This document shows, piece by piece, positions 8,866 to 55,255 of a stretch of 64,000 nucleotides of DNA (position 1 is its first letter; every line of letters starts with the position of its first letter). Source of the DNA: Macrostomum lignano (taxonomy: Eukaryota); contig NIVC01002127.1 of the NCBI GenBank assembly GCA_002269645.1, positions 44,240 to 108,239 on the forward strand, written 5' to 3'. Under the pieces are notes generated by a model. That model saw only the letters and a program-made list of their open reading frames with translations, searched no databases and was not told the origin of the DNA. Position numbers and translations under genes: made by a program.

Positions 8866-9238
8866 CGTATATGTAATGTCAAAAAATCTCTGTTGTTTGA
8901 GTCTTCAATCCTAGGGACTTATAAGCTGCCTACAGATTGAAGGTAAAAGCATTCATCTTTACTTTAGCTCTCACTATCTCAATGAGAACATGGGCAGTGT
9001 GGGCACATGGCATAAAAAACCTGGCACCTAAAGTTGCCCCTGTTCTGAAACTGGCAATATACATTTATTTCTATTTGAATATTGTCATAAAACCTAGGAA
9101 AATTCATAATGCACTCTGATCTTATTGTTACAGCCATCTCTAACCCAAGTTAAGTTTAACTGAAAGCTGCAATTGTAAAAGGTTAACCCAAAGTCTCAGT
9201 TGGCATATCTAGAACATTATATAAGGCGATTATCTGCT

Positions 9239-12200
9239 ATGCTGACCAGTAGTGTCAGCTCCACAATTGGTGGCAGTGTAAAACCGCCTGTGTCAGCTGC
9301 AGCGGTGAGTTCATCTAGCAAATCTCCGGGTCACCAGCATCTTCGCCGGCTTGGTTGTCAGTGCTCAAATCCTCCATCAGTGAATGGTTCCGGTTTGATC
9401 TGCTGTCCAGGCTGTTCAGACTGGTTTCATCGGGACTGCGTTAGTCACCTGCTTGCTAATGTTAGTAATAATAAAGTTGGAGGCGATAAAGATAGTTCGA
9501 CTGTGAATTCATTTCGATGCGAGTCGTGTCTCAGACTGCGACGGAATCCGAGTCCCGGTTAGTGTAGATTTCTAAATGTATTCTCATTTTTAGTCAATGG
9601 ATAATTTAAAAAGCATGTCTACATCTACTTTAAAAAACCATTGGGAATTTCATTGGATTCATCAGATAATGTCACCCACCAAAGGAAGACTAAGAGAGGA
9701 CTCTATTACCCACTAGAAAAGTAAGTGTGAGGGTTCTATTACCCACCGTAGGGGGACTAAGAGAGGGTTCTATCACCCACCATAGAAGGACTAAGAGAGG
9801 GTTCTATCACCCACCATAGAAGGACTAAGAGAGGGCTCTATCACCCACCATAGAAGGACTAAGAGAGGGCTCTATCACCCACCATAGAAGGACTAAGAGA
9901 GAGGGTTCTATCACCCACCATAGAAGTACTAAGAGAGGGCTCTATCACCCACCATAGGATGACAAAGAGAGGTCTTTCACCCACCATAGTAGGACTAAGA
10001 GAGAGGGTTCTATCACCCACCTTAGGACGACTAAGAGAGGTCTTTCACCCACCATATGGGCACTAAGGTAGAGGGTTCAATCATCCACCAAAGTAACTGA
10101 TACATGTATAATGTATCAAGTTGATGAATTCGCAGGCACTCCCGAGCACGGCTACGCTTATGATGATCAACATCAACAGTCTCAGAATCTGCAACTCCAT
10201 CTGCAGCAAGCAGTGCCTCATCATAATCAGCAGCAGCAATCTCAATTGCTGTCGCCACAAAAATTGTCATCGCCAACAAAACAGTCTCACGGCGCGGCGT
10301 CTTTCTATGAAACCTCAAGCGCAACCTACGGAGGCGGCGCCGGCCGTGGCGGCAGGAATTCCAGCGGCTCGAAGAAGATCAGCTTCTTGCCTAGATCTGA
10401 TTCTTCTAGTAGCGGCCAGCAGCAACTAAGCAAACCGTCTACTAGTAAGGCGGCTGTTAGCGATGGTTAGTGATCGAATGGATTTATATGTTCTTGTCCA
10501 TGGTATGTCTTGGTGTGTCCTTGGTATCTGTCTTAGTGTGTCCTTGGTATGTCTTAGTGTGTCCTTGGTATGTCTTAGTGTGTCCTTGGTATCTGTCTTT
10601 GTGTGTCCTTGGTATGTCTTAGTGTGTCCTTGGTATCTGTCTTATTGTGTCCTTCGTGTCTGTCTTATTGTGTCCTTGGTATGTCTTAGTGTGTCCTTGG
10701 TATCTGTCTTATTGTGTCCTTGGTATGTCTTAGTGTGTCCTTGGTATCTGTCTTATTGTGTCCTTGGTATCTGTCTTATTGTGTCCTTGGTATGTCTTAT
10801 TGTGTCCTTGGTATGTCTTAGTGTGTCCTTGGTATCTGTCTTATTGTGTCCTTGGCATGTCTTATTGTGTCCTTGGTATGTCTTAGTGTGTCCTTGGTAT
10901 GTCTTAGTGTGTCCTTGGTATCTGTCTTTGTGTGTCCTTGGTATCTGTCTTATTGTGTCCTTGGTATCTGTCTTATTGTGTCCTTGGTATCTGTCTTATT
11001 GTGTCCTTGGTATCTGTCTTATTGTGTCCTTGGTATCTGTCTTATTGTGTCCTTGGTATCTGTCTTATTGTGTCCTTGGCATGTCTTATTGTGTCCTTGG
11101 TATGTCTTAGTGTGTCCTTGGTATCTGTCTTTGTGTGTCCTTGGTATGTCTTAGTGTGTCCTTGGTATGTCTTAGTGTGTCCTTGGTATCTGTCTTTGTG
11201 TGTCCTTGGTATGTCTTAGTGTGTCCTTGGTATCTGTCTTAGTGTGTCCTTGGCATGTCTTAGTGTGTCCTTGGTATGTCTTAGTGTGTCCTTGGTATCT
11301 GTCTTTGTGTGTCCTTGGTATGTCTTAGTGTGTCCTTGGTATCTGTCTTTGTGTGTCCTTGGTATGTCTTAGTGTATCCTTGGTATCTGTCTTTGTGTGT
11401 CCTTGGTATGTCTTAGTGTATCCTTGGTATCTGTCTTATTGTGTCCTTGGTATCTGTCTTAGTGTATCCTTGGTATCTGTCTTATTGTGTCCTTGGTATG
11501 TCTAAGTGTGTCCTTGGTATCTGTCTTATTGTGTCCTTGGTATGTCTTAGTGTGTCCTTGGTATGTCTTAGTGTGTCCTTGGTATCTGTCTTTGTGTGTC
11601 CTTGGTATGTCTTAGTGTGTCTTGGTATCTGTCTTATTGTGTCCTTCGTGTCTGTCTTTGTGTGTCCTTGGTATGTCTTAGTGTGTCCTTGGTATCTGTC
11701 TTATTGTGTCCTTGGTATCTGTCTTAGTGTGTCCTTGGTATCTGTCTTTGTGTGTCCTTGGTATCTGTCTTATTGTGTCCTTGGTATCTGTCTTAGTGTG
11801 TCCTTGGTATCTGTCTTATTGTGTCCTTGGCATGTCTTATTGTGTCCTTGGTATCTGTCTTATTGTGTCCTTGGTATCCGTCTTATTGTGTCCTTGGTAT
11901 CTTTCCTAGTGTCTTTTATTTGTTTATCGATTATGCTTCTGTTGATGCCTACTTGACACTTCTAGTTTGTTGGTTTTCTTCTAAATTTCCCCGCCTGCAT
12001 ATTTCACTTATTCACCTATTCAAAAACTTATTGCAACCAAATAACCTGTCTGACTAAACTCAGGTGGTAAAGGCGCCGGTTCCTCTGGCCGTCGTGCACA
12101 GGACGCCCCCGCGGGCTCCGCTAAGTCCAATACTGATGCGGCCTCGCCTCCGCAGATTGACGTGCTGGCTGAGATCTTTAGCGACACGACGCCTCGACAT

Positions 12201-15200
12201 TCAGAGCACAAGTGGCCGGATATGAACTGCCGCATTTGCCAGACTGGATCGCCTGAGCCTGAGGTTTGAGTCTCCACTGGCTCTGTAGTGTGTGCCGGCT
12301 GTTGTCCCAGATCCTCAGTTGCTGGGCCAGCCTCCCGAATACTCAGTTGCAGTGCCAGCCTCCCAGATCCTCAGTTGCAAGGCCAGCCTCCCAGATCCTC
12401 AGTTGCTGGGCCAGCCTCCCAGATCCTCAGTTGCTGGGCCAGCCTCCCAGATCCTCAGTTGATGAGCCAGCCTCCCAGATCCTCAGTTGCAGGGCCAGCT
12501 TCCCAGATCCTCAGTTTCTGGGCCAGCTTCCCAGATCCTCAGTTTCTGGGCCAGCTTCCCAGATCCTCAGTTGCTGGGCCCGCCTCCCGGATCCTCAGTT
12601 GCTGGGCCCGCCTCCCAGATCCTCAGTTGCTGGGCCCGCCTCCCAGATCCTCAGTTGCTGGGCCCGCCTCCCGGATCCTCAGTTGCTGGGCCAGCCTCCC
12701 AGATCCTCAGTTGCAGTGCCAGCCTCCCAGATCCCCAGCCCCTATCAGCGCAATTCCGCCATACACTTCTGCCGCAGTACTTCAAAGCCAAGCCTCTCCA
12801 ACCAATCGCAGAAGCTCCTCAGACAGCCTTTACGTCGCAGCGGCTTGCAATACGACGACGATCGCGCAGTCGCATCGGTGCCTCAGCCTCCGCCAGCTTC
12901 ATCAGACGGCATACCATATCATTCATACTACACAACCGCAGCTGTCGCAGACGAACCTTCAGCGGATGGCAACACCGAGAAGTCGTCAGTCGGTCAAGCA
13001 ACACCTGTCGTCGAACAACAGCCTGACGACGCCGATCCCATGGATCTTGTCGACGACGAAGATGACGAGAAGGAAGCTGGGAAGAATATTAATGCCGATA
13101 GCCGCGAGGCTCTGGCTAGGCAGCAGCTTAGCAAGCGAATTGCTGGGGTGGCTCAGCAGCAGCAGCAGCCACCGCGTCGACACGTTTGGTCCGGCATAGC
13201 CGACAGTCAGGCGGGAGAATTCCGACTTCGAGCCTATCCGGTCAGCGGCGCCGACTGCACGAATCCTAGGCGAATTGTCGGCCATTTTCCTGCGGATCGG
13301 CGGCTTATGCTGAAAGGCCGTTTGGCTAGGAGTACCTGTTTTGATTATCTTAAACAGATGCAAAGAGTTGGTACTAGAGATATATTGGTGCTTAGCTGCG
13401 TGCCAGATGGACAGGTGAGTCTGTAAAATATCACTTTTCTGGGTTAGTGATAGAAATTGATTTTTAAGTTATAACTAATGACCGTTTAGACTATTGTATT
13501 GTACCATAAAAATGGCCGGTTTAATGTTTAGGTCATAACTAATTACGGGTTTAATGATTGAGTCACAAACAAGGACAGGTTTTATAATTAGAATATAACT
13601 AATGACCAGATTGATGATTGGGTCATAACTAATGAGCTATTTAATGATTGGGTCATATATAATAACCGGTTTTATGATTGGTTCATAACTAGCGATTGGT
13701 TTGATAATTGGTTCATAAGTTATATATAGTCACGGTTTGATGATTGGGTCATAACTAATGACCATTTTGATGATTGGGTCATAACTAATGACCAGTTTGA
13801 TGATTGGGTCATAAATAATGACCAGTTTGATGATTGGGTCATAACTAATGACCAGTTTGATGATTGGGTCATAACTAATGACCAGTTTGATGATTGGGTC
13901 ATATATAATCACCGGTTTTATGATTGGTTCATAACTAGCGATTAATTTGATAATTGGTTCATAAGTTATATATAGTCACAGTTTGATGATTGGGTCATAA
14001 CTAATGACCATTTTGATGATTGGGTCATAACTAATGACCAGTTTGATGATTGGGTCATAACTAATGACCAGTTTGATGATTGGGTCATAACTAATGACCA
14101 GTTTGATGATTGGGTCATAACTAATGACCAGTTTGATGATTGGGTCATATCCAATGATTGGTTTAATGATTGGGTCATAACTAATGACGGGTTTAATGAT
14201 TGAGTCACAACCAAGGACAGGTTTTATAATTAGAATATAACTAATGACCAGTTTGATAAATGGGTCATAACTAATGACCGGTTTTATAATTGGATCATAT
14301 CTAATGACCAGATTGATGATTGGGTCATAACTAATGACCAGTTTGATAATTGGGTCATAGTTAATATTAACTAATGACTGGTTTGATGATAGGGTATATT
14401 TTACAGTAAGAATTAATTCAGCAAAAATGCTCCCATTAACGCAGCCGCACAAGCAGTCCTACCTTGGCCTTCACCAAGCTCTAGTCGTGAAAGACATTGT
14501 TGCCGTGTGCGTGAACAAGCCGCCTCACGTGAAGGATTTTTATCTGTACGCCCTGCCTGCCAAAGCTCCCGTACCCTCCGTGCTTCTGCCTTTCAAAGGC
14601 CCAGGTAGGTTGCGTTGCGTTTCGTTTAATTTTTCTGGGTTTCTTAGAATCCAACTTTTTCAAATGTATGGATTTCGATCCCAATTGTAGATCTCATTAT
14701 CGCCACATGCAAGCTCCCAATCGGAAGTCCACAGACCAAAAATCCCCATTCTCAATCCCAGAATCCTCATCCTCAGTCCAAGAATCCCCATTATCAGTCC
14801 TATAGAATCCCCATCCTCAGTCCTAGGCCTAGAATCACATCCTCAGTCCCAGAATCCCCATCCTCAGTCCTATAGAATCCCCATCCTCAGTCCCAGAATC
14901 CCCATCCTCAGTCTAAGAATCCCCATCCTCAGTCCAAGAATCCCCATCCTCAGTCCAAGAATCCCCATCCTCAGTCCAAGAATCCCCATCCTCAGTCCAA
15001 GAATCACCATCCTCAGTCTAAGAATCCCCATCCTCAGTCCAAGAATCCTCATCCTCAGTCTAAGAATCCCCATCCTCAGTCCTATAGAATCCCCATCCTC
15101 AGTCTAAGAATCCCCATCCTCAGTCCTATAGAATCCCCATCCTCAGTCCAAGAATCCCCATCCTCAGTCCAAAAATCCCCATCCTCAGTCCAAGAATCCC

Positions 15201-16620
15201 CATCCTCAGTCCAAAAATCCCCATCCTCAGTCCAAGAATCCCCATCCTCAGTCTAAGAATCCCCATCCTCAGTCCAAGAATCCTCATCCTCAGTCTAAGA
15301 ATCCCCATCCTCAGTCCTATAGAATCCCCATCCTCAGTCTAAGAATCCCCATCCTCAGTCCTATAGAATCCCCATCCTCAGTCCAAGAATCCCCATCCTC
15401 AGTCCAAAAATCCCCATCCTCAATCCAAGAATCCCCATCCTCAGTCCTATAGAATCCCCATCCTCAGTCCAAGAATCCCCATCCTCAGTCCTATAGAATC
15501 CCCAACCTCAGTCCCAGAATCCCCATCCTCAGTCCCAGAATCCCCACCCCCAGTCCAATAATCCCCATCCTCAGTCCCAGAATCCCCATCCTCAATCCAA
15601 GAATCCCCATCCTTAGTCCCAGAATCCCCATCCTCAGTCCCAGAATCCCCACCCCCAGTCCAATAATCCAGAACCGTGAGTAACGGTGAGAAAATTCCAA
15701 ATACAATTTAATTACTCGCAGGCTTAAGCGAAGATCGGCCCCACCTGCTGCTGGCAATCATAGTGAAATCTCGGGGCGAACAACATCAGCAGCCTCATCA
15801 GCATCATCACCAACAATCCGCGGTGTCCTACGAAACGTCGAAAAATCCGTCGCCTCCTCTATCGCCGTCGGAAGTGCCCAGTCCGACGCCCAGTAGCGGT
15901 GGCGAGCCAGACTATTACGACTCGGTGGTCGGTGGTATTCAACAGCAGCAGCCGCCGCCTCCTCCGCCGCCGCCGCCTCCACCGTCTCAGCCAGCGGCGC
16001 CTTCTTTAGCTACGCCGGCTGACGGTAGCGACACTCCGCCGCCTCCGCCACCACCGCCGCCTCCGCCGCCGCCTCCGCCTCCGCCGCCGCCTCCGCCGCC
16101 GTCGCAGCAGCAGCAGCAGCAGCATCAGCCGCCTATGCCGCTGCCAGTAGACGACGTCCCTGTGGCAGCTTATTCAACCTCAGTGCCAGCTGATTATCTT
16201 GTCGACGCATCGCCAACAGCAACTCTGCCAAGCTATTGGTCGATGGAGCCTCAGCAACAGCAGCAGCAGACGCTGGATGTCTATAGTACTAGCTGGCCAA
16301 GTGTTGAAGGCTATTCACCGCCTCCTCCGCCACCGCCACCTCAGCATCCTCAGCCTCATCATCATCATCAACCGCCTATGATGCCCTATGGACAGCCTAA
16401 TAATAGTCAGTTTCCGTTTATGCAGCACCAGCATCATCAGCATCCGCCGAATTTCCCACCGCATTTTGCGCCAGTACGTCGTGGTGGCGGTGGCGGGCCA
16501 CCAGAGCGAGGCTTTCATCGAGGACGAGGTGGCGGCCGCGGCTTCTGGCACCATCGAGGTCGAGGCGGAGGCGGAGGCGGAAACTATCACAGAGGCGGCG
16601 GTCATTTCGCGCCCTATTGA
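9239..16620 (+). CDS. DIDO1/PHF3-like PHD-finger + SPOC-domain protein; exons 9239-9557, 10121-10465, 12064-12263, 12749(or 12778)-13414, 14445-14604, 15722-16620; ~860 aa
   Basis: PHD finger CQC...CCPGCSDWFHRDC...CESC. DTTPRHSEHKWPDMNCRIC resembles the DIDO1 DTTSQHRAHLFDLNCKIC motif. SPOC motifs include VKDFYLYALPAKAPVPSVLLPFKGPG|LSEDRPHLLLAIIVK. Pro/Gln-rich and RGG-rich tail. Splice phases are consistent except for an ambiguous exon 4 acceptor. Confidence 0.88.
9700..10090. repeat. 34-bp minisatellite in intron 1 of the PHD-SPOC gene (TCTATCACCCACCATAGAAGGACTAAGAGAGGG[T/C])
   Basis: Period of 34 measured (CATAG at 9781, 9815, 9849). Confidence 0.93.
10497..11905. repeat. 21/23-bp minisatellite in intron 2 (GTGTCCTTGGTATGTCTTAGT and GTGTCCTTGGTATCTGTCTTATT)
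   Basis: About 60 tandem units of two interleaved variants. Confidence 0.96.
12304..12738. repeat. 28-bp minisatellite in intron 3 (CCTCCCAGATCCTCAGTTGCTGGGCCAG)
   Basis: Period of 28; same unit as 55630-56218. Confidence 0.96.
13470..14395. repeat. 30-bp minisatellite in intron 4 (GATTGGGTCATAACTAATGACCAGTTTGAT)
   Basis: Tandem units; gives a 10-aa period in the minus-strand ORFs. Confidence 0.95.
14735..15670. repeat. 21-bp minisatellite in intron 5 (AGAATCCCCATCCTCAGTCCA)
   Basis: About 40 tandem units. Confidence 0.96.
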
Positions 16621-18234
16621 AGCAGTTGACTAAAACTAAACTGTTAATTGTGATCTTTTCATAGTGACGCTTGGCAGCAAGGATTTAAATAATTGCGCTT
16701 GATTACATATTTGTTCGGATTTCTGCTAGATAATATCTTGATAGACTAAAATATAACAAAAAACGCTAGTTCAGCTACTTACTGTAAGTAGAATAACATG
16801 GTTTTTTAGTTTCTTTTAATTGAAGGCTAATGCAAAATAAGTTGTAAAGATTGCTTTGTATACTACAATGATAACGAGTTGAACTCTTGGTTTGCAATAA
16901 TTGCTTTATTTTGTTTTCTATGTAGTACTACAGTAACTTGTGATTGCTCGATTCTTGTGTCACATGTTCTGAGCAAGAATTGCATGCATCTGTAAATATT
17001 TTATGTCGCTAAAACAATACTGAGAAATTCTGTCGTTTTTTACTGCGTGTTACTTTTTAGGAGTAAATAAACTGATCACCGTTTAAGTTCGAGTTCTGAC
17101 TTATAGTTTTCTAAACATAATCAATAATAGATTAAAAACTACACTGCCTGTTTTGTAAATTGAATTGTTATTCTTAGTATAAACTATTTTAGTTGCTTAA
17201 TTCTTTACTCTCACCTCATTCAAAATTTATAATTTTTTCGAGTGAACTGAGCTAAATTTATTTGTTTATCCACTCCGTTTTATTAGCCGATCTATTTGTC
17301 GCTTTTCCTTGACCGCATGCATTATTATTTCTTTCAGAAGCTTTAGGGTGTAGAAATCGCTAGTGATTTTCTACCTCTTGATTCGCATTGTTAATCCTGT
17401 ATTTTACTTATTGCTTTTTCTGGGAATATAAGACTCACCAAGTTGTATTATTAAAAAGCTATTTATATTTGTCTGTCGTAATAATTAAAACTAATCTCGT
17501 GTTTCAAAATTTAAATTGGCGCCAAGATATTATTCTTTGTTGACGTCGTTATCAAAAGGAAATTATAAAAAGTGTGTATTGGGATTTCAGTTCACGTCGA
17601 GTTGTCGTACTTTTGTCTTAAATTCAAATTTTTGCGGTTCGTTAAAACCAAATTAGTTTTGGCGCCAATTCAAAATATTCGCTTAAATATTTGTTTTCGA
17701 TAAGTTAGTTGTGTGAAAAGAATTAAATCTTCATATAAACAAATAACATTGTCTAAATACCTTAATAATACATTTAATTAAAATTTTATCTAGAGTAAAG
17801 TACTTTAAATTTCGCTGAGCATTCTGTATTTTATTACTTACTAAATTTGGTTAACTTGCTGCACTCATCCCTTGTAATTAATAACCTTAATTAGTAAATC
17901 ACAAATTGTCGACTATGATATCCTAAATAATTGAGTCAAATACATTTCGCTTCATTCAATGACTTTAACGCCTTTAATTACTGATCAGCCATTGGACTGA
18001 ATTAAACCACCTGAGTCGTTTTTTGTCTGAATTTTATTGTTCCTTTTGTACAAAGCTTACTACGATACATATCGGTTATTTACAATAGCTGGTATTTTTG
18101 ACATTAAATAATTATTAAAATTGAAGACAAAATAAATTTCGATGCCTACGTACTGCAAAAACAGATAAGGGGCAACTCGATTAAAACTAATTAACAATTA
18201 ATATTAATTAATATTTCAGGCTGGTAAAAAGTTT

Positions 18235-18306
18235 CTCCCCGACCGGGAATCGAACCCGGGCCTTCCACGTGACAGGCGGAGATACTGACCACTATACTAT
18301 CGAGGA
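18235..18306 (-). tRNA. tRNA-Asp (GTC)
   Basis: TCCTCGATAGTATAGTGGTCAGTATCTCCGCCTGTCACGTGGAAGGCCCGGGTTCGATTCCCGGTCGGGGAG. The acceptor, anticodon and T stems pair, A and B boxes are intact, and a TTTTT Pol III terminator follows a few nt downstream. Confidence 0.96.
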
Positions 18307-18343
18307 GTTACTTATTGGAAAAGATGTTTTGGTATATAAAGAT

Positions 18344-20999
18344 TCAACCAAACTGCAGGCGCTCTATGTAGAAAAACGTCTGATTTGGCAAGACGGAATT
18401 TTTCGAAATTTGTCGATGCAGACAAATGTCAGCTTGTCGTTCTTTTTAAGCCGCCTAACGCCGTACAGAATGCATTTAGTGAAGGCGCCAGCCAGATGGC
18501 TCTGCTCGCAGTGGATCCAATTGTTGTTGTTTAATTGAATGGAAGTCTCCACTGGCATATCTGTGATGTCGTCGCGGAATGTAACCTGAGAAAATTTGAT
18601 GATTCGAAATGATTTCAATTAGCCTTAGTCCAAGATAAAAGCAGCTTATTAAATGAAATCAATTAATGCGAAGAAGGTGTGTGATGTTCTACCTGAGGTG
18701 TGTTATGGACTCCCTGAGGTGTGTTATGGGCTTCCTGAGCCTGAGATGTGTTATGGACTCCCTGAGGTTTTATGGACTCCCTGAGGCGTGTTATGGACTC
18801 TGAGGTGTGTTATGGGCCCTCTGAGGTGTGTAATGAGCCATCTGAAGTGTGTTATGGACTCCCTGAAGTGTGTTACTGTTATGGACTCCATGGGGTGTGT
18901 TATGGGCCCTCTGAGGTGTGTTATGAGGAGCTGTCTGAGTTGTGTTATGGGCTGCCTGAAGGTGTGTTATGAGCCTCTGAGGTTGTGCTATGAAGTCCCT
19001 GAGGTGTGTTATGAACATCCCCTGAGGTGGGCTTTAATTTTGGGGCAACCCAAGCTGTGTCGTAATTATTATATAGCCAGTTCCGTCGTACGAATTTATA
19101 AATATGGTAATTCTGTCGAAACTTGAAAAAATTCATTTCTAATTAACAGCTCAGCAAAAACCAACTCACCTGTGCAAATACTCGATACACTCCCAGATGA
19201 TTAATAATTAGTTTCGCCATCTGGCCATCGTGATGAAGCTGTGCAAATTCTTTAGACCTGTTGCGCATCGAGTAGCCTCTTGCTGAAGGCTTGATGCTAT
19301 CTTCTGTTAGGGGTCCGAAACTGTGGCCTGAATTGGGAAGGTGAACAGTAATTCATTCGGTTTTTTAGCAAGGTGATGGGGCTGATTTTAGGTGCAGTTG
19401 TTGATCGAAAGGGTAGTGTAGTGGATGGATCTGGGTAGTTTATTGCAACACAAAGCATGGGTTGAGTAGTTTAGAGGATTAATTTGGCTGTTTAGTGGAT
19501 GGTTTATGTTGCTTAGTCAGTAGATGAGGTTATGATGCGGATTAGGCAGTTTAACAGAATTGTCATCTTTGCTCCCGGCAACTCTCACCCGTGGTGACGT
19601 AATCCGTTCCTTGCAGACAACCATTGTCGAGTCTTCTTTTGCCCACCGTTGAATGACACACGTCCATTAGCTTGGTTTGAAACACAAGTCGCATCCATGC
19701 CTGAATGAAATGATATGAAATGTATGAAATAGTAGAAAATCCGTCATCGACTACTACATGTATTGAGAAAAATAAAATTAGTGGAGCATATGATCAATTT
19801 AGAATTATTTCGCGTTTGGATTAGTTCAGATGAAGAACTACATTCACTATCGATACCACTTATTATTCGAATTCCACGTAAAGTCGCACATCGAAAATGT
19901 AGATAACTGTAATTTGCATGTAAATGTAATACCCCTAAAACGTCACATCATCAAGATGCTACACCATCGAAATGACACAAAATCAAAACATCATACCATC
20001 AAAAACGTCACAAAATCGCAACATCACATCACCAAGACGTCGCACCATCGAGACGTCACACCATCGAGACGTCACACCATCGAGACGTCACACAATCGAG
20101 ACGTCACATCATCGAGACATCACACCATCGAGACGTCACACCATCGAAACGTCACAACATCAAGACGTAAAATCATCTAGACGTCACACCATCGAGACGT
20201 CACACCATCGAAACGTCACACCATCGAGACGTCAAATCATCTAGACGTGACACCATCGAGACGTTAAATCATCTAGAAGTTACACCATCGAGACGTCACG
20301 CCATCGAAACGTCACATCATTGAGACGGCACACCATAGAAACCTCACACCATCCGAACGTCACACCATCGAGACATCACAAATCGAGACGTCACACCATC
20401 GAGACGTCACGCCATCGAGACGTCACATCATTGAGACGGCACACCATAGAAACCTCACACCATCCGAACGTCACACCATAGAAACCTCACACAATCCAAA
20501 CGTCACACCATCGACACGTCACATTATCAAACCGTTACATTATCGATAAGTAACATCAGCTTTCGCAATAATTCCATAGAATTTCATTTCATACCCGGTC
20601 GCTTTCCAGTTTAACAGAGGCCAAGTGCTCCTGCCGAGCAAGACGCAGAGCGACACAGGCGACACTAAAAGCTGCAACTAGCGCTGTTTGAGCGAACAGC
20701 CAGAGTCTCGGATCGTTCAGTCGACATTTAGAAATTGTTCTTGTATTTTTTGAGTTCGTCGTTGCTGCTTCTTTTGTTGATCGATTTCGATTTTCTTTTT
20801 TTCGATTTTTAACTTTGGAATGAGTTGTTGTTGTTGCCGAAGTTTGCACTGTTGGTTTTTCAGTTGACTGCAACTGCTGGTCTATTGCATCATCAACTCG
20901 TTCGCTGTGGATACAGGTGTACAGACTACTGCTGACGCTGTTCCGATTGTCAAGATGCTGCGGTTGCTGTTGAGACTGGTTTATCGACTGCTCGTGCTG
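18344..20999 (-). CDS. TNF-superfamily ligand, Eiger/EDA-like, type II membrane protein; exons (5' end uncertain, ~21036/20999)-20595, 19700-19589, 19327-19170, 18585-18344 (1-nt frameshift at ~18395)
   Basis: Phase-consistent GT-AG joins give a basic cytoplasmic N-terminus, a TM segment LWLFAQTALVAAFSVACVAL, then KLIINHLGVYRVFAQVTF...WIHCEQS...FTKCILYGVRRLKKNDKLTF...PNQTFFYIERL. This parallels the EDA TNF domain (ELEVLVDGTYFIYSQV...FLQC...NTCYTAGVCLLK...TTFFGAIRL). The start codon is not identified. Confidence 0.82.
18685..19030. repeat. ~21-bp minisatellite in the last intron of the TNF-like gene (CTGAGGTGTGTTATGGACTCC)
   Basis: Degenerate tandem units. Confidence 0.9.
19920..20540. repeat. 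16-bp minisatellite in a TNF-like gene intron (CATCGAGACGTCACAC)
   Basis: Tandem units, homogeneous centrally and decaying at the edges. Confidence 0.92.
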
Positions 21000-21169
21000 C
21001 TGTGGCCGAGGCGGGAGCTTCGGAGGGCAGGCTATTCTGCAGTTCGCGATCGTAAGAGGCAGGATTACGCGGAGATAGGACGGAATGTACTTTACTTTTA
21101 ATTGTTTTCTCTGTCAGGCTGGGTAGCTTTTGGGATGGGAAGCTGTCAGGGTGGTTACTACTTTGACAG

Positions 21170-21512
21170 CGGCTAACTATCCTGACAACTACCCATCCTG
21201 ACAACTAACCATCCTGACAACTACCCATCCTGACAACTATCCATCCTGACAACTATCCATCCTGACAACTATCCATCCTGACAACTACCCATCCTGACAA
21301 CTACCCATCCTCTGACAGCTAAAACCATCCTGACAGCTAACCTTAGCTAAACAGCTAAGAGTGGTAGCTGTCAGAGTGGGTAGCTGTCAGAGTGGGTAGC
21401 TGTCAGGATGGGTAGCTGTCAGAGTGGGTAGCTGTCAGAGTGGGTAGCTCAGAGAGTGGTAGCTGTCAGGGTAGCTGTCAGAGTGGTAGATGTCAGTGTG
21501 GGTAGCTGTCAG
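21170..21512. repeat. Two 16-17 bp arrays in inverted orientation (ACTACCCATCCTGACA)n then (GGGTAGCTGTCAGAGT)n
   Basis: The second array is approximately the reverse complement of the first. Confidence 0.85.
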
Positions 21513-21904
21513 TATAGGCAGTTGATATTTACTTTTTACGAGTAATTTACCTTGGAGGAAGTGGTGGACTATTTTCCTCCATCCTTGTATTCGATTTCAG
21601 AGTCAGCAGGTTTCTATTAGCATGAAGAGGTGAAGTTCTTTATGTTGAAACTTTGTTCGAATGGGCAGTCATTTATGCAAGTAAAGTTTTACCAATTTTC
21701 GCCACTGAAGATGAAAATCAGAATTTGTGTAATATACATTTGTGCAATAGACGCAAAACGTTGTATAAACAGGGTTAAACGTTATAAATAAAATTATAAA
21801 ATGAATTTCAGACTTTTGGCGTTTGAAAGCGGATGATAAAAGTTGGGTGAAATTTAGGTTCAGATAAGTATCATGGCTGAATAGCACGATGGTGCACACC
21901 GAGG

Positions 21905-22585
21905 AGAGAGGTAGATGGAGACAGGTGTAGCGAGGTGGCTAGGTGGAGGGACATGGAGAGACGTGGAGAGACGTGAAGATGCGTAGAGAGACGCGGAGAG
22001 AAATCGAGTGAGGTGGAGAGTCGCGGAGAGACGTAGAAAGACGCGGAGAAACGTAGAGAGACGTGAAGAGACTTAGAGAGACGTAGAGAGACGTGAAGAG
22101 ACGTAGAGAAACGTAGAGAGACGTAGAGAGACGTAGAGAGACGTAGAGAGACGTGAAGATGCGTAGAGAGACGCGGAGAGAAATCGAGTGAGGTGGAGAG
22201 TCGCGGAGAGACGTAGAAAGACGCGGAGAGACGTAGAGAGACGTGAAGAGACTTAGAGAGACATAGAGAGACGTAGAGAGACGTGAAGAGACGTTGAGAG
22301 ACGTAGAGAGACGTAGAGGGACGTGAAGAGACTTAGAGAGACGTAGAGAGACGTAGAGAGACGTGAAGAGACTTAGAGAGACGTTGAGAGACGTAGAGAA
22401 ACGTAGAGAGACGTAGAGAAACGTAGAGAGACGTAGAGAGACGTAGAGAGACGTAGAGAGACGTGAAGATGCGTAGAGAGACGCGGAGAGAAATCGAGAG
22501 AGGTGGAAGTCATGGAGAGACGTAGAGAGATCTGGAGAGACGTAGAGAGATCTGGAGAGACGTTGAGAGACGTGGGTAGAGGTGA
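21905..22585. repeat. 10-bp purine-rich minisatellite (AGAGACGTAG) with higher-order duplications
   Basis: Read directly; the block GTGAAGATGCGTAGAGAGACGCGGAGAGAAATCGAG recurs three times. Confidence 0.93.
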
Positions 22586-22994: not shown

Positions 22995-23813
<819 letters not shown>

Positions 23814-24187: not shown

Positions 24188-24740
24188 ACTAGATCTATAT
24201 CTATCTGCTTCTGCGTCCATCTACACTAGATCTATCTGCTTCTAGGTCCATCTACACTAGATCTATCTGCTTCTGGGTCCATCTACACTAGATCTGGCTG
24301 CTTCTGGGTCCATCTACACTAGATCTATCTGCTTCTGGGTCCATCTATACTAGATTTATCTGCTTCTGTGTCCATCTAGATAGATCTATCTGCTTCTGGG
24401 TCCATCTACACTAGATCTATCTACTTCTGAGTCCATCTATACTAGATCTGCCTGATTCTGGGTCCATCTACTACTATCTGATCTGGCTCTGCTTCTGGTC
24501 CATCTACACTAGATCTAGATCTATCTGCTTCTGGGTCTCTATCTATACTAGATCTATCTGCATATAGATCTAGCATCTATACTAGATCTATCTGCATCTA
24601 TACTATCTATACTAGATCTATCTGCCGGTGTCCATCTATACTAGATCTATCTGCCGGTGTCCATCTATACTAGATCTATCTGCCGGTGTCCATCTATACT
24701 AGATCTATCTGCCGGTGTCCATCTATACTAGATTTATCCA
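24188..24740. repeat. ~29-bp minisatellite containing the TAGATCTA palindrome
   Basis: Unit CTAGATCTATCTGCTTCTGGGTCCATCTA[C/T]A. Confidence 0.92.
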
Positions 24741-26272: not shown

Positions 26273-27460
26273 TTACTTTTCCAAGCTCTCCCGAGGCCTC
26301 CTGTCCGTATTCTGGTCTGCCGAGCCCCCCATCGGAGCTGCAACCGATCCAGCCACCCGGTCGCCAGCTCCGCCAGTCGTCCTCGCCTGCGACCGCGACA
26401 GGAACATGTCCTCGCGGCCAGCTCGATTGCGACGTCGGAAAAATCGTTTCAAACCCTTTTTGAACGGCTTGTAGGTGCCGCCGTAAATAGCCGCGTTGAT
26501 GCTGGTGTGGCCCATGGCCAGCCAGGCCAGGCAAAACTCCACGCCTTCGCTGATGCTCGACTTTCGCAGTGCGATGGAGATTTTGTAGGCAAAAAACGGC
26601 AACCAACAGACTAGGAAGCCGAGAATAACGCAAGCATTGGTTATCCAGCCTCGAAGACTCGATCGCATGTTCGACCATTTGTTTTGAGCAGTCTGACCAC
26701 CGTTCAGAAGATTCTGTCCCTGTTCCGGGTTTTGATCTGGCAACGCTACCGGCTGCTGCGTGCCCAAACGCATTCGTCGGATATTGTTGACATGGCGTCG
26801 CGAGATGACAAAAATTGTCCCATAGCCAATCACCAGCATGAGCACCATGAACAGTATTAGACCGATTCGAACCCGAACAGGCTTAGGTCGACTTCGTTAC
26901 GGCCTCGACAAGATTTCGTGTTAAACATCAGAGTGTTGGCGGTGAACTCGTAGTAATAACCGCTGATGGGTACGAGACGCGTCGGTAAGAAGCTGAGAAA
27001 AGCCAGCACGGTCCAAACCGCCGACACGATGACTGTAACTTTGCGCTTCGACATCATTCTATCGTAACTGTAGGGCAGCTTAATCTGGTGCAGCTTGTCC
27101 AAACCGATTCCGATGGTAATCACTAGGGTGGCCGTCAGCATCAGGTAGTAGATCCACGAGCCAAAGTCCAGCTCGATCCGGCTGCCCGGTCCAAATCCGC
27201 TGACTGCGTAGCGAAATGCGAACAGTAAGAAGCACACGCCCGAGCCGAAGTCGCTGATTGCCAGGCTCAGCATGTAGATGCCCTGGTTAGTGCGAAGGGC
27301 CGGCGTATTGTAGAACACTAGCATGACGAGAAGGTTACTAGGCAGGGCTAGCACTGAAATGGTGAAGACTAGAGCTATTCTCCAGCCAGACGACTCAATC
27401 TCGGTAAGGCTTCCGCAGCCTGGACAGTTAATCCATTCAACTGTAGCATTTTTGATGCAG
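26273..27460 (-). pseudogene. Rhodopsin-class (class A) GPCR with one frameshift at ~26868 (pseudogene or assembly indel); start codon not located
   Basis: Seven hydrophobic segments with TM1 SN, TM2 LAISD, TM3 end DKL (DRY position), TM4 W, TM6 CWLPF and TM7 NAAIY (NPxxY position). Adding one base at TTCG^AATC joins ORF 27354-26857 to ORF 26848-26273. Candidate acceptor TTTCAG at 27461. Confidence 0.8.
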
Positions 27461-28350
27461 CTGAAATGTTTAGAATCCGGTTGTTACAGGAATTAGTTTA
27501 AGCAAAGTATTAGCGCCTAATTAAAGCACATATCTGCCCTGGAGCTTTATGAGATTCACGGGCAAACGGGAGATACATGGTATATATTCGCCTCGGTCAA
27601 TAAACGAGACACCTCGAGCCTTTGACCCTAGACAACACAATAAATGGGAAATATGGTATGTATCTCCTAATCTATGCTATGGTCTTAAGTTACGATTTAC
27701 CATAGACAGGTGCACTCAAAACCAATGGCTTTTTTGGCCACAGACGCAACAACAGATGGAATGCCAACTGTTTCAACCTCGCTTCCTTCAGACAAAAATC
27801 TTACTTATGCTATTCCTGAGACAGCAGTGGAGATGCATACAGAATTACAAAATTTCAAGTCTAAAAGGAAAGCATAATAAAAAATCTTTCTAAATAAGCT
27901 ACGCTGGTAACTGGAGCGTGATTTACAAAAGATAGACGAGCTTCTTAGCTGCACTAACAAGCTGCTAGTGAGCCATCTAACAACATGCATGATGCTTGGT
28001 GGCATGTAACAAGCAACTGGCCTCTTGAAAACGCGAAGAAAAACAAGCAAAGAAAGTGCAATCCTGCGATGCTATAATAGTATAAAAGTGATGTAGTTCT
28101 TGAAACAACGCCCTCAAAAGACGCTAATTGCGATTCTCTTTCACAAAAAAGATTTGCTTGGCATCTGCAACTGCGTTGTTTCCACATGTATTTATGTCAT
28201 TCAAGCTTTATTCTGCCTCCTCAGAGATGGCACCTTCCGCTGACAGGAAATTGCGCCGCAAATCACCGCCTTGTGTCAGTTAACAGGGCAGGAAAATGAG
28301 ATATACTCGAAGGTGTGAGAGAGTTGGAGAGAATATATGGGATATAAAAA

Positions 28351-28629
<279 letters not shown>

Positions 28630-30133
28630 GTTGAGAATATTCAAGGCGACTATCTAACCTTCCCAATTCACTATTGAAGCTCAAGTGAATTAGTTCAACG
28701 TTCTCAGGTAGTATATACCCAGTGACCGAAAGGTTGACCGCAAGTTCGGTCGAACTTGGATAAGCTCCCACTGCTTAAGTGAGTTAGCGATTGTTGACTA
28801 GAATTCGAGAAGAAGCCTCTTATAGATGCCCGCTCTGAAGAGAATTTGGCTAATGAGACTTGATTTTAAGTGGGCCTAAAGCACGCAGCATATCAATAAT
28901 GCATGATTTACTGATGCTAGTAAGCTAATAATTTGTTAGCTCCAGGTAGTAGACGCTATTATGGACAGCCTCATTCCGTCAGTCGGATTAGAGTTCAACC
29001 TGCATTAGCTATACCTGTGTGTATAGTAAATACATATTCATGATTCTCAATTTCTCTTAGCGGAAAAGCTAAAGAATGCTGAGAAGAGAGCTTTTTATTG
29101 AAGGTTACGGGAAAATTTACGACGCAAAATCGCAGCACAATGGCAAAAAATCCCTTGCGCAGAAGAGTGCCTTCTCTTTATAACTCTATTTGCGCAATGT
29201 TCAATGCTAATTTTTTGTTAAAATAGAAGCTTACTATAATTAAATATAGCAAAATATTTTAAATTAGCAAGTTTGTTATTGAATAAGAAACTGTACAAGG
29301 AGAGCCATAGCCTAGTGGTCCATGACGGCGCTCGATTCCAAGTGCAGTCACTGTTAATTTGGGGCTAAAATATCATCTCAGCTTGGCTCTGCTCGTGCAA
29401 TTAAAGGCCTTGAGGGCCAACCCCCAAGGCACAGTGAAGTGTACGTGCCTCGCTGTACACTCCTGTGTGAGTGTGTGCCTGTGCGTATGACTGCGTACGT
29501 ATCCTTGAGACTGTGTGCCTGCTCAGGGCAGTCGGCGGAATGGGCAGTAATGCCTCTCGCCGGTTGCGTGACAATGTCGCTTAAAGTGCGCCAGGGTGCA
29601 CACAGAATTCCCTTTCATTAATGCGACTGCACTGGGAATCGAGCCTGGGCCGCTGGCTCAGTATTTCTGAGCCCAACTTATTTTAAGAATAAGCAATGAA
29701 AACTGAAAAAAAGCATTTTATTAACGATATGAAAGTCAAATGTAGATTTTACCTGAAATTCATTTCAGTTGGAAGAGAATTTTTCAGAGGCAGTTGAAGT
29801 AGCGAATTTTTCTTTTCTGAATCGTTCAATAATTTTTTTTGTGCGGATTGGTACGAGTAGATTAGAGAAAAGTAGAGAAAACTGGAAGTGCTTTTTTATA
29901 GCGGGAATGCCTCATTTATTTCCTCAAACTGTGGGCAGCACCACCGATTCGATTGGCGGTATATATAGGCCAATGATCGGCAAGCCAAGAATTATGAATC
30001 TTCTGTGCTACTTCCAGAAGAAGCGTTGCCCTTTTCCACTGCATACAGATTTTAATTATTAATGTTTTGGTAACACTACTTACTAGTAGCACTTAAAGGG
30101 CAATTGTACAATATAAAAGGCTGGGGTTGTTGT

Positions 30134-31350: not shown

Positions 31351-33218
31351 ATGACTGCGGACGCGTTGAATTCATCCAGACGGCCAAGAAGTTGCTGCGA
31401 CAAATCTTGGAGGTCGGCTAGGCGATCGGTACTAAGCCAGGCAGCCACTGAGTCCACTGCTCACGGTCTGTCTCGAACGGTAGGAGACAGGCACTGGGTC
31501 GTGCGAATGCTCTGGCTATTGGCATTCCTAGTTGTGGTGTCGGTACTATTGAAACTTCTAGTCGACGCTGTGAATCGCCTGGCTAGTCAACCGGTGAGCA
31601 CGGCTGTGTCACCAAATTTGGAAAAGTTCGCATTCCCCGATATTCATATTTGCTCCTATCCGATGATATCCGCAAGCTACTCCGCCACGATGTCAGAAGC
31701 TGAGCTAAATTACACCAACTGGAAGATTAATCGCATTATGAACGTACTACACCTGGCAAACATCACTGGAGAGGAGTTGGTTCGACTAGCCGCTCAAATC
31801 TTTGTTGGCAGCGTTCCATACAGCTTTCTCAGTCGGAACATGGGCATGCGGATGGAGCAGACGATTATTGGCGCAACTGTCATGCCAGTGACGCATAATC
31901 TAGTCCTTGACGTTGACATTATCAAACTGAGTCACTACAAATTTCTTAACTGTTTCACGATACGCCCAAAGACAAGCACTGCCCAGAGACTGCTTAGTTA
32001 CGTGGCCGGACACCTAGACATAACCTTGTTCGCCGACGCGACTTATAATAAAACCCTCAAGCTAGGGAACGATACGATCGATGTCAGAGGACTCGGCTTC
32101 ATCAACTATGAACTGCTGATTGGGTCCGGGTTCAGGATTTATTTTACCGAGCGAGGTCGCTATCCGGATGAGTACAGCACCTCCGTCGCGGTCAGTCCGG
32201 GTTTCCATCATCAGATCAGTCTCAGCATGAGGGTCAACTCCCTAGCCAAGGACAAGAAGCAGTGCGTCAGTGACAAACCGCTAGAAAGTATTTACGACGC
32301 TGAGACGGGAAAAGGGAACAAATATAACTACAGTCTTGGGAGTAAGTTCATTCTGTTAGGTTGTTTTTTTACTTTTTTATCAAATACCAAACGGAAGTTT
32401 ATTGTTAACCGTTAATTTACATTTTAGCTTGCTACGCGAAATCGTTGAGCAGAATGTTTCACGAACTGGGCTTGAACTGTTACATTGCTGGCTACAGTCC
32501 GATAATGTACAGCGACAGGAATGTAACTTGCTGTAACAACCTGACCAGCCTTCTCGATGCTTATTACTCGTCATCTATTCCGTTGAAAAGTGTTCTGCAA
32601 GCGATTCACTTCATCCAGAAGCTTTACAATGGCTCTGTTGTTCGAGAAATGGTCGACTCAGTAAGTAAGATGGAGTCCAACTGTCAGTTTAGCAGGCCTT
32701 GCGAAGAGCGAATTTATGAGCCGTCAGTGACATTCGTGTTGTTCCCACTGCGCCAGGGACTCCGGACAGAGCTGACAAACATATTTAAACAACTGACGGA
32801 AGACAGGCAGAAGACGTACTTTGTTCCAGGTAGAGAGTGGATGGTCAATCTGTTCAGCTCCGCGTACGGTCCAAGCAGCACCACCGAATCCGAAAAGGAG
32901 CTGGTGGACGCAGCGTCTGAGAACATCGTCCGCCTTCATATCCACGCTGGAGAGCTGAGCTCGACGCTACTCAAACAAGATATTTCTTACAATTTCGAAG
33001 ATTTAACGGCGGGTGTTGGGGGTCTGATGGGGCTGTTCATGGGCGGCAGTGTCCTGACTCTGCTGGAACTCATCGAACTCTTTGCATGCCTGATCCTGGG
33101 CCGACAACTGACTGCTAGAAATGCTGCCAACTCTGAAGGCGATTCGACTGTCACTGGTCATGCCGGCAATGCAGAGGTGCAGCTTGAAATCGGCTCTGAT
33201 CAAAACACTGTCTTCTGA
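31351..33218 (+). CDS. DEG/ENaC (amiloride-sensitive sodium channel/ASIC family) subunit; exons 31351-32341 and 32428-33218; 593 aa
   Basis: STAHG pre-TM1 motif, TM1, FPDIHIC post-TM1 motif, YNYSLG|TC across a phase-1 86-nt intron, and TM2 GGLMGLFMGGSVLTLLELIE with the GxS filter. Confidence 0.93.
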
Positions 33219-54987: not shown

Positions 54988-55255
54988 TAATATCTATTAT
55001 TTGTTTACTGAAAATCTAAAATTATTTATTATTAATCTTTGAAAATATATATTAGTCTAATAAGATTTGAAGTTGGTGAAGGAAAATTTTAAGCATTCTT
55101 AAGTTTTATTAAATGTTTTTCATTTTCAATTTGGCATCTTGAATGTAGACCCTGAGTACCAAATAGTACTGCGATTCTGATGCTTGGAAAACACACAGAG
55201 ATTATATTTCTGCTTTTTTATACTTTACTTAATTTTATTTACTGCCGTTGCTCCA

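What the first reader, a model, noticed from the sequence alone, without database searches (positions are those of the whole stretch)
18344..21113. Hidden Eiger/EDA-like TNF ligand gene assembled from short exons
Seen: two exons (112 and 158 nt) are missing from the ORF track and the others appear as unlinked fragments. Joined at GT-AG sites they stay in frame (phases 0, 1, 0) and give cytoplasmic tail, one TM helix, short stalk and a TNF homology domain. Known: the L-x-[IV]-x3-G-x-Y-x-[IV]-[FY]-x-Q-V motif, the internal Cys pair, G-[IV]-x2-L-x3-D-x-L and terminal TFF are TNF hallmarks. Inference: automated annotation could easily miss it because of the frameshift and repeat-filled introns. 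If the host is a free-living flatworm it bears on TNF ligand retention in that phylum.
Basis: partly seen in the sequence, partly recalled or inferred. Interest (0 to 1): 0.8.

Follow-up and report, generated by a model that had tools for sequence, protein, structure and literature searches.

The report
Known flatworm TNF ligand gene
The region holds a real five-exon gene for a membrane-anchored TNF-family signalling protein of the free-living flatworm Macrostomum lignano, but UniProt already labels it as TNF family and TNF ligands in this species were published in 2020, so it is ordinary rather than hidden.

Summary
The three junctions (20595/19700, 19589/19327, 19170/18585) are GT-AG, in phases 0, 1, 0. 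They reproduce, residue for residue, UniProt A0A1I8G0K9, "TNF family profile domain-containing protein" of Macrostomum lignano.

Two corrections to the model:
- The 5' end is wrong. The frame open to 21113 has no ATG. The real start is a 32-nt exon at 21582-21551, spliced to 21036.
- As written, the window stops early at TAG 18366-18364 and loses the last beta strand. One extra T in the TT run at 18398-18397, which is what A0A1I8G0K9 implies, restores ...NQTFFYIERLQFG*.

The repaired 328-aa protein passes Pfam TNF (26.5 bits, cut-off 23). Its moderate-confidence model matches EDA-A1, Eiger, GITRL and APRIL structures. Its intron positions and phases match a paralogue's.

TNF ligands in free-living flatworms, including M. 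lignano, were published in 2020 (PMC7519573). This paralogue is not in that paper's list. With A0A1I8IXE1 it forms a divergent long-tailed subgroup.

It is unresolved whether the frame break is an assembly error or decay of one redundant copy of a neopolyploid genome. A neighbouring GPCR gene carries a similar break.

Verdict: correct identification, already known, low interest.

The parts
21551..21582 (-). Coding exon 1 (32 nt): ATG at 21582-21580, encodes MEENSPPLPP plus 2 nt of the Arg11 codon. Donor GT at 21550-21549.
   Evidence: Six-frame search for the N-terminus of P0001. Sequence read. Splice sites.
21037..21550 (-). Intron 1 (514 nt, GTAAAT...CTGCAG), with 16-nt tandem repeats at 21173-21512.
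20595..21036 (-). Coding exon 2 (442 nt): a Ser/Gln/Thr/Pro-rich cytoplasmic tail of about 120 aa, the transmembrane helix and a short stalk (...LASVKLESDR). Ends in phase 0.
   Evidence: tblastn of P0001 gives 100% identity over residues 11-158..
20637..20705 (-). Single transmembrane segment, L122-A144 (LWLFAQTALVAAFSVACVALRLA).
   Evidence: Kyte-Doolittle 19-residue window peaks at 1.95, and this is the only segment above 1.6. It aligns with the TM segments of the paralogues.
19701..20594 (-). Intron 2 (894 nt, GTATGA...TTCAG), with a 16-nt tandem repeat array at 19940-20523.
19589..19700 (-). Coding exon 3 (112 nt): start of the ectodomain (AWMRLVFQTKLMDVCHST...NGC...DYVTTG), containing the first Cys pair. 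Ends in phase 1.
   Evidence: Same intron position and phase as paralogue BOX15_Mlig009154g1.
19328..19588 (-). Intron 3 (261 nt, GTGAGA...TTCAG).
19170..19327 (-). Coding exon 4 (158 nt): ...FGPL... up to LIINHLGVYRVFAQ (TNF strand C motif). Ends in phase 0, after Gln.
   Evidence: The paralogue has its intron at the same place (YGQ|VSF).
18586..19169 (-). Intron 4 (584 nt, GTGAGT...CTCAG), with 21-nt-period tandem repeats at 18675-19029.
18344..18585 (-). Coding exon 5: VTFRDD...HCEQ...TKC...GVRRLKKNDKLTFVCIDKFRK. After the frame break it continues ISVLPNQTFFYIERLQFG, with stop TGA at 18346-18344.
   Evidence: The Pfam TNF match extends to profile position 122 of 127 only in the repaired frame.
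18397..18398 (-). Frame break: a TT run where A0A1I8G0K9 implies TTT. As written the frame runs into TAG at 18366-18364, giving a 321-aa product without strand H.
   Evidence: With one T added, P0001 is an exact 317-aa prefix of the 328-aa product.

Best explanation
This is a five-exon, minus-strand gene of Macrostomum lignano for a type II membrane protein of the TNF ligand superfamily.

Shown: the exon chain, the family membership, the species, and the existence of a frame-restoring sequence variant in a public protein.

Domain layout: a cytoplasmic tail of about 120 aa, one transmembrane helix, a stalk of about 14 residues, and an ectodomain of about 170 residues ending in a TNF homology domain.

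Inferred from the family: the ectodomain folds as a jelly-roll and assembles into a homotrimer. It signals by clustering a TNF receptor. The candidate is the single NGFR-like, death-domain-bearing TNFR reported for this species (PMC7519573). The ligand may act membrane-bound or after shedding. No canonical furin site (R-x-K/R-R) is evident in the stalk, so shedding is uncertain.

It belongs to the lineage-specific Macrostomum TNF-ligand expansion. It is already recorded as UniProt A0A1I8G0K9.

The copy in this window has a one-base shortfall at 18398-18397 that removes the last beta strand. I judge this somewhat more likely (about 0.6) to be a consensus indel error of the assembly than a true lesion.
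For: - Identity with a database protein: there is a 100% match to A0A1I8G0K9, 'TNF family profile domain-containing protein', M. lignano. tblastn places its residues on exactly the exons given. It is an exact prefix of the repaired product.
- Family membership, by sequence: Pfam PF00229 scores 26.2-26.5 bits (E 7e-6 to 9e-6) against a cut-off of 23.
- Relatives in a library of 1.84 billion representatives: the only hits at E <= 1e-3 are M. lignano TNF_2 proteins A0A1I8IXE1 (4e-8), A0A1I8HE44 and A0A1I8GNH9.
- Published flatworm ligands: BLASTP against M. tuba comp32280 gives 1e-19 in a small database.
- Solved structures, by profile: a profile of four family members hits APRIL, EDA-A2 (4.6e-10), EDA-A1, BAFF and Eiger (1e-3), with the Cys pair aligned.
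- Fold: in the AlphaFold2 model, residues 64-170 have pLDDT of about 64-82. Foldseek's top PDB matches are EDA-A1 (E 3e-6, TM 0.60-0.63 by target), Eiger, GITRL and APRIL.
- Gene structure: the three ectodomain introns sit at the same positions and phases (0, 1, 0) as in paralogue BOX15_Mlig009154g1.
- Repaired C-terminus: TFFYIERL aligns with the family's TFWGxVRM/L terminal strand. The D-x-L to TFF spacing of 17 residues fits the family.
- Frame break as artefact: a second gene in the window, the GPCR at 26273-27354, also needs one added base to align without gaps to its paralogue.
Against: - As written, the window's reading frame ends early. The as-is product scores 19.2 bits, below the Pfam cut-off, so this copy may not make a functional ligand.
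- No transcript or read data could be consulted, so expression and the junctions are supported only by the database model and the paralogue's gene structure.
- The structure model is of moderate quality: mean pLDDT 59, and residues 1-63 are below 50.
- The protein alone finds nothing in PDB by phmmer.
- It lacks the second Cys pair (GPLxC...C) that most Macrostomum paralogues have.
- Trimerisation and receptor binding are inferred, not tested.
Confidence: 0.9

Rival explanations
1. The copy in this window is a decaying duplicate, a young pseudogene. The one-base deletion at 18398-18397 is real and truncates the TNF domain before its last strand. Function is carried by the other subgenome copies.
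For: - The frame break is in the sequence as given.
- M. lignano is a neopolyploid in which about 70% of the Mlig_3_7 assembly exists as three paralogous copies about 1.1% diverged in coding sequence (PMC10733133).
- A near-identical second copy exists: A0A1I8IC90 has a few substitutions, and its model is collinear with this window.
- The neighbouring GPCR is also frame-broken, and no identical protein is on record for it.
Against: - Apart from the single base, the copy is 100% identical in protein to A0A1I8G0K9 over 317 residues.
- The 11 codons after the break are still open and still family-like (TFFYIERLQFG*), so there is no further decay.
- The early M. lignano assemblies were built from PacBio reads. 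From my own knowledge, single-base consensus indels are common in such assemblies.
- Two isolated one-base breaks in otherwise clean genes fit consensus errors as well as they fit decay.
Confidence: 0.35
2. It is not a TNF ligand but another jelly-roll protein of the C1q/TNF-like superfold, and the TNF motifs are convergent.
For: C1q-like and BclA/ExsF-type structures appear far down the Foldseek list (ranks 44 and 46). The Pfam score is modest.
Against: - Only PF00229 is hit, and no C1q family appears.
- The top 40 structural matches are all TNF ligands.
- The architecture is type II membrane-anchored, with no signal peptide or collagen stalk.
- The E-F Cys pair aligns with EDA and APRIL.
- Paralogues score up to 31 bits on PF00229.
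Confidence: 0.03
3. The exon chain is a chance concatenation of short ORFs between repeats.
For: The individual ORFs are short (41-94 aa), and the region is repeat-rich.
Against: There is 100% identity across every junction to an independent database protein. Intron positions are conserved with a paralogue. The domain hit is significant.
Confidence: 0.01

Closest known systems
UniProt A0A1I8G0K9 (Macrostomum lignano, 'TNF family profile domain-containing protein', 317 aa)
   Same: It is the same gene product. It is an exact prefix of the repaired 328-aa protein, with the same five-exon structure.
   Different: The database entry stops at ...ISVLPNQ and lacks the last 11 residues (TFFYIERLQFG). 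The window has one T fewer at 18398-18397. I could not fetch the entry's own locus.
Macrostomum TNF ligand homologues of Bertevello et al. 2020 (PMC7519573), e.g. BOX15_Mlig009154g1 / A0A1I8GNH9 and M. tuba comp32280
   Same: - Type II topology.
- A conserved ectodomain from [HR]L[VA][IFL] to the terminal TF[FW] strand.
- The first and third Cys pairs.
- Identical intron positions and phases.
   Different: - Only 25-30% identical.
- Not among the 10 M. lignano sequences in that paper's Data S3.
- Has a cytoplasmic tail of about 120 aa, against about 10 aa.
- Lacks the GPLxC...C Cys pair.
- Its nearest relative is A0A1I8IXE1 (29-33% identity), which is also absent from that list.
Vertebrate EDA / APRIL / BAFF branch of the TNF superfamily
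   Same: - Best profile-to-PDB matches: APRIL, and EDA-A2 at 4.6e-10.
- Best structural match: EDA-A1, 1rj7.
- The Cys pair joining strands E and F aligns.
   Different: - About 17-20% identity.
- No collagen-like Gly-X-Y stalk and no furin site, both of which EDA has (my own reading of the sequences).
- Orthology was not tested. A recent survey places all M. lignano TNFSF homologues in one lineage-specific clade (bioRxiv 10.1101/2024.07.27.603686).
Drosophila Eiger
   Same: An invertebrate type II TNF ligand. Eiger structures 6zt0 and 6i50 are among the top fold matches, and they also hit the family profile (6i50 E 7.6e-5, 6zt0 E 1e-3).
   Different: Sequence similarity is marginal. The reported M. 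lignano receptor is NGFR-like (PMC7519573); Grindelwald is Eiger's receptor in the 6zt0 complex, and receptor pairing was not tested here. No phylogeny was run here.

Membership tests
TNF ligand superfamily (TNFSF; Pfam PF00229 TNF homology domain) | Sequence matches the TNF homology domain model above the curated threshold. | tested here: met
   26.2-26.5 bits against a cut-off of 23 for the one-base-repaired product. The as-is product (19.2) and A0A1I8G0K9 (20.2) fall below the cut-off because the last strand is missing.
TNF ligand superfamily (TNFSF; Pfam PF00229 TNF homology domain) | Ten-strand jelly-roll beta sandwich resembling solved TNF ligands. | tested here: met
   The AlphaFold2 model is all-beta, with pLDDT of about 64-82 over residues 64-170. 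Foldseek against PDB gives EDA-A1, EDA-A2, Eiger, GITRL and APRIL, probability 1.00, TM 0.54-0.64 by target. Moderate model quality is a caveat.
TNF ligand superfamily (TNFSF; Pfam PF00229 TNF homology domain) | Type II membrane topology: cytoplasmic N-terminus, a single TM anchor upstream of the domain, and no signal peptide. | tested here: met
   There is one hydrophobic segment, L122-A144, N-terminal to the domain. Its orientation is inferred from homology, not predicted.
TNF ligand superfamily (TNFSF; Pfam PF00229 TNF homology domain) | Homotrimer formation and binding to a cysteine-rich TNF receptor. | not testable with these tools
   No multimer or complex prediction or assay was available. 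A TNFR exists in the species according to PMC7519573.
Macrostomum TNF ligand family (Bertevello et al. 2020) | Significant similarity to the published flatworm ligands, with shared gene structure. | tested here: met
   BLASTP gives 1e-19 to 5e-6 against all published full-length Macrostomum groups (no hit to the Microdalyellia fragment). HMMER hits to three M. lignano TNF_2 proteins are the only hits at E <= 1e-3 in 1.84 billion representatives. Intron positions and phases are identical to BOX15_Mlig009154g1.
EDA / APRIL / BAFF subfamily | Disulfide-forming Cys pair linking strands E and F. | tested here: met
   HCEQ...TKC aligns Cys-to-Cys with APRIL and EDA-A2 in the profile alignments. Bond formation itself was not tested.
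Ectodysplasin (EDA) orthologue | Collagen-like Gly-X-Y repeat stalk and a furin cleavage site between the TM segment and the TNF domain. | tested here: not met
   The stalk is RQEHLASVKLESDR, with no Gly-X-Y run and no R-x-K/R-R motif (sequence). It is EDA-like in fold only.
Eiger orthologue | Phylogenetic grouping with arthropod Eiger. | not tested
   No phylogeny with Eiger sequences was run. The profile E-value to Eiger is only 1e-3. A preprint places the M. lignano ligands in their own clade.

The most novel reading that the evidence does not exclude
This gene and A0A1I8IXE1 may form a distinct subgroup of flatworm TNF ligands not yet described in the literature. The subgroup would have a long, low-complexity cytoplasmic tail and would lack the second ectodomain Cys pair. 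The published catalogue would have missed it because every public model is C-terminally defective and scores below the Pfam threshold. The long tail could indicate reverse signalling or regulated trafficking.
Probability: 0.4. Interest if true: 0.3.

Novelty: already known. Interest (0 to 1): 0.15.

Why it matters
It matters little beyond curation.
- That free-living flatworms keep endogenous TNF ligands while parasitic ones lack them is already published (PMC7519573).
- This protein already carries a TNF label in UniProt.
- The useful residue is practical: a complete 328-aa model with the correct first exon and C-terminal strand, for a paralogue missing from the published list.
- It also warns that this assembly region carries single-base frame breaks that defeat gene callers. 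Of the two public models, one is truncated and one is a chimera.

Tried and rejected
1. phmmer of the repaired ectodomain alone against PDB found no hit at E <= 10. Only the four-sequence profile reached solved structures.
2. Fetching the locus of A0A1I8G0K9 failed because no gene with exactly that product is on record. So I could not compare the DNA at the frame break between assemblies.
3. A profile search of the 5.8-billion-protein collection returned only two known paralogues, which left the alignment for structure prediction shallow.
4. I considered a 44-nt mini-intron (GTCTGC...AAATCAG, after ...KLTF) as a way to restore the frame without an indel. I rejected it. It would delete the 17-residue G-H loop that all family members keep. 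A0A1I8G0K9 also reads straight through that stretch. The chimeric model A0A1I8IC90 does use that donor, to jump into unrelated antisense ORFs.
5. There is none. The out-of-frame ATG near 20726 stops after 20 codons (read).
6. I rejected the C1q-like reading (see the rival explanations).
7. The last large protein search went to the neighbouring GPCR, to test whether frame breaks recur. It found no identical protein, only a 55% paralogue that aligns without a gap across the break. This is suggestive but not decisive.
Full report
**Observation**

- The junctions 20595/19700, 19589/19327 and 19170/18585 are flanked by GT and AG.
- The middle exons are 112 and 158 nt, and the phases are 0, 1, 0.
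- These exons lie in ORFs of only 43 and 41 aa, so a 60-aa ORF list would miss them.
- Tandem Repeats Finder shows 16-21-nt arrays in three of the four introns: 21173-21512, 19940-20523 and 18675-19029.
- The quoted motifs are present: LIINHLGVYRVFAQV, HCEQ...TKC and GVRRLKKNDKL.

The frame open back to 21113 contains no ATG. Position 21113 is simply the first codon after a TGA.

The database homologue starts MEENSPPLPPR. That peptide is encoded at 21582-21551 and is followed by GTAAAT. The acceptor CTGCAG ends at 21037, so exon 2 starts at 21036.

The gene therefore has five coding exons:
- 21582-21551
- 21036-20595
- 19700-19589
- 19327-19170
- 18585-18344

All four introns are GT-AG.

**Identity**

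A word-indexed search of 5.8 billion proteins returned one cluster at 100% identity.
- UniRef100_A0A1I8G0K9 is "TNF family profile domain-containing protein" of Macrostomum lignano, 317 aa.
- The cluster's second member, A0A1I8IC90, is 763 aa.

tblastn puts A0A1I8G0K9 on exactly the exons above.

The 763-aa entry is a near-identical second copy. Its gene model leaves the TNF gene after ...KLTF. It then runs on through minus-strand ORFs at 16659-9318, collinear with this window. Where I checked, at 13324-13004, it overlaps the plus-strand SPOC-domain ORF. I regard it as a chimeric prediction.

An exhaustive HMMER pass over 1.84 billion representatives found only three further proteins at E <= 1e-3. 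All are M. lignano "TNF_2 domain-containing" entries: A0A1I8IXE1 at 4e-8, A0A1I8HE44 and A0A1I8GNH9. So the window is M. lignano, or something extremely close to it.

**The frame break**

As written, the CDS is 986 nt and stops at TAG 18366-18364. That gives 321 aa ending ...KFRKIPSCQIRRFST.

A0A1I8G0K9 reads ...KFRKISVLPNQ, which needs TTT where the window has TT (18398-18397). Adding that one T has two effects:
- A0A1I8G0K9 becomes an exact prefix of the product.

The repaired C-terminus aligns with the family's terminal strand (TFWGMVRMAD, TFWGLVRLSD, STFLQIARLSD).

Pfam scores follow the repair:

| Product | PF00229 score (cut-off 23) |
|---|---|
| As-is product | 19.2 bits |
| A0A1I8G0K9 | 20.2 bits |
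| Repaired product | 26.2-26.5 bits |

I rejected a 44-nt mini-intron as an alternative repair. It would delete the 17-residue G-H loop that all relatives keep.

**Is it a TNF ligand?**

Four lines of evidence beyond Pfam agree that it is.
- A profile of four Macrostomum ectodomains hits solved APRIL, EDA-A2 (4.6e-10), EDA-A1, BAFF, Spodoptera Eiger and Drosophila Eiger (1e-3). The Cys pair aligns to theirs.
- An AlphaFold2 model from the same shallow alignment is moderate: mean pLDDT 59, about 64-82 over residues 64-170, and below 50 for residues 1-63.
- Foldseek nevertheless ranks EDA-A1, EDA-A2, Eiger, GITRL and APRIL first, at probability 1.00.
- One hydrophobic segment (L122-A144) lies upstream of the domain. 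This gives the usual type II layout.

**Independent support for the splicing**

The paralogue BOX15_Mlig009154g1 was fetched from assembly GCA_002269645.1 as locus L001. Its three introns are at the same alignment positions and phases as here:
- before the [HR]L[VA][IFL] strand, phase 0;
- three residues before [LF]GPL, phase 1;
- after the strand C Gln (YGQ|VSF against FAQ|VTF), phase 0.

**Comparison with what is known**

Bertevello et al. 2020 (PMC7519573) searched platyhelminth genomes with PF00229.
- They reported TNF ligands only in free-living species, including ten M. lignano sequences.
- They proposed that parasitic flatworms lost the ligand.

A 2024-2026 preprint places all M. lignano TNFSF homologues in one clade.

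This paralogue is not in their Data S3. It is 25-30% identical to their three M. lignano groups. It pairs with A0A1I8IXE1 by reciprocal best score and in a rough neighbour-joining tree without bootstrap. Both have long cytoplasmic tails. The window protein lacks the GPLxC...C Cys pair of most Macrostomum paralogues. That subgroup is the only mildly new element.

**Artefact or lesion?**

M. lignano is a neopolyploid. About 70% of the Mlig_3_7 assembly exists in three copies, about 1.1% diverged in coding sequence (PMC10733133). Loss of one copy is therefore plausible.

Two observations argue against loss. The copy shows no other damage, and the 11 codons after the break are still family-like.

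A rhodopsin-type GPCR at 26273-27354 (minus strand) is also split into two frames at about 26857-26862, with no intron signals. With one base added it aligns without a gap across the break to its 55% paralogue BOX15_Mlig018633g1.

Two isolated single-base breaks in one window lean towards consensus indel errors. I put that at about 0.6, but reads are needed to settle it.

**Mechanism (inferred)**

The mechanism below is inferred from the family and was not tested.
- The ectodomain trimerises.
- It engages the species' single NGFR-like, death-domain TNFR (PMC7519573).
- I see no R-x-K/R-R furin motif in the 14-residue stalk, so it may act membrane-bound.

**Verdict**

The gene and the biological point are both already public. 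Interest is low.

Noticed in passing
window 18234-18307 (minus strand): A tRNA-Asp (GTC) gene lies 36 nt downstream of the TNF gene's repaired stop codon, on the same strand. It is therefore probably inside or abutting the 3' UTR.
   Followed up: partly
window 26273-27354 (minus strand), break near 26857-26862: A rhodopsin-family GPCR gene is split into two frames, with no intron signals at the break. With one base added it aligns without a gap to its 55% paralogue BOX15_Mlig018633g1. No identical protein is on record in the 5.8-billion-protein collection. This is the second single-base frame break in the window.
   Followed up: yes
window 21038 down to 9318 (minus strand): UniProt A0A1I8IC90 (763 aa, named 'Protein kinase domain-containing protein') is a chimeric gene model. 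It takes the TNF exons up to ...KLTF and then minus-strand ORFs at 16659-9318; one of them (13324-13004) overlaps the plus-strand SPOC-domain ORF. It is collinear with this window and comes from a near-identical second copy.
   Followed up: partly
window 9200-13426 (plus strand): ORFs with a PHD finger (9200-9562) and a SPOC domain (12863-13426), possibly exons of one gene. They are interrupted by long coding-frame tandem repeats ([26 protein letters not shown]-like units). Similar repeats recur at 55666-56232, inside the condensin gene region.
   Followed up: partly
window 31351-33218 (plus strand): A DEG/ENaC (amiloride-sensitive sodium channel, PF00858) gene in two long exons. They are separated by a GT-AG intron of about 84 nt (about 32343-32426) and appear intact.
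   Followed up: partly
window 55184-57226 (plus strand): Condensin complex subunit 2 (Cnd2/CAP-H, PF05786) exons, with a repeat-filled gap between them.
   Followed up: partly
window 22997-23813, 21956-22573, 15000-15669, 24195-24738: Very dense short-period tandem arrays: (TGTC) about 204 copies, a 10-mer about 62 copies, a 21-mer about 31 copies and a 31-mer about 17 copies. A (TGTC)n-like array recurs around 28276-28771. Such arrays generate long spurious ORFs on both strands.
   Followed up: no
UniProt A0A1I8G0K9, compared with window 18344-18378: The database protein ends at ...ISVLPNQ, although the window encodes 11 more in-frame residues and a stop directly after it. The reason is unexplained (a contig end or a partial model?).
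   Followed up: partly
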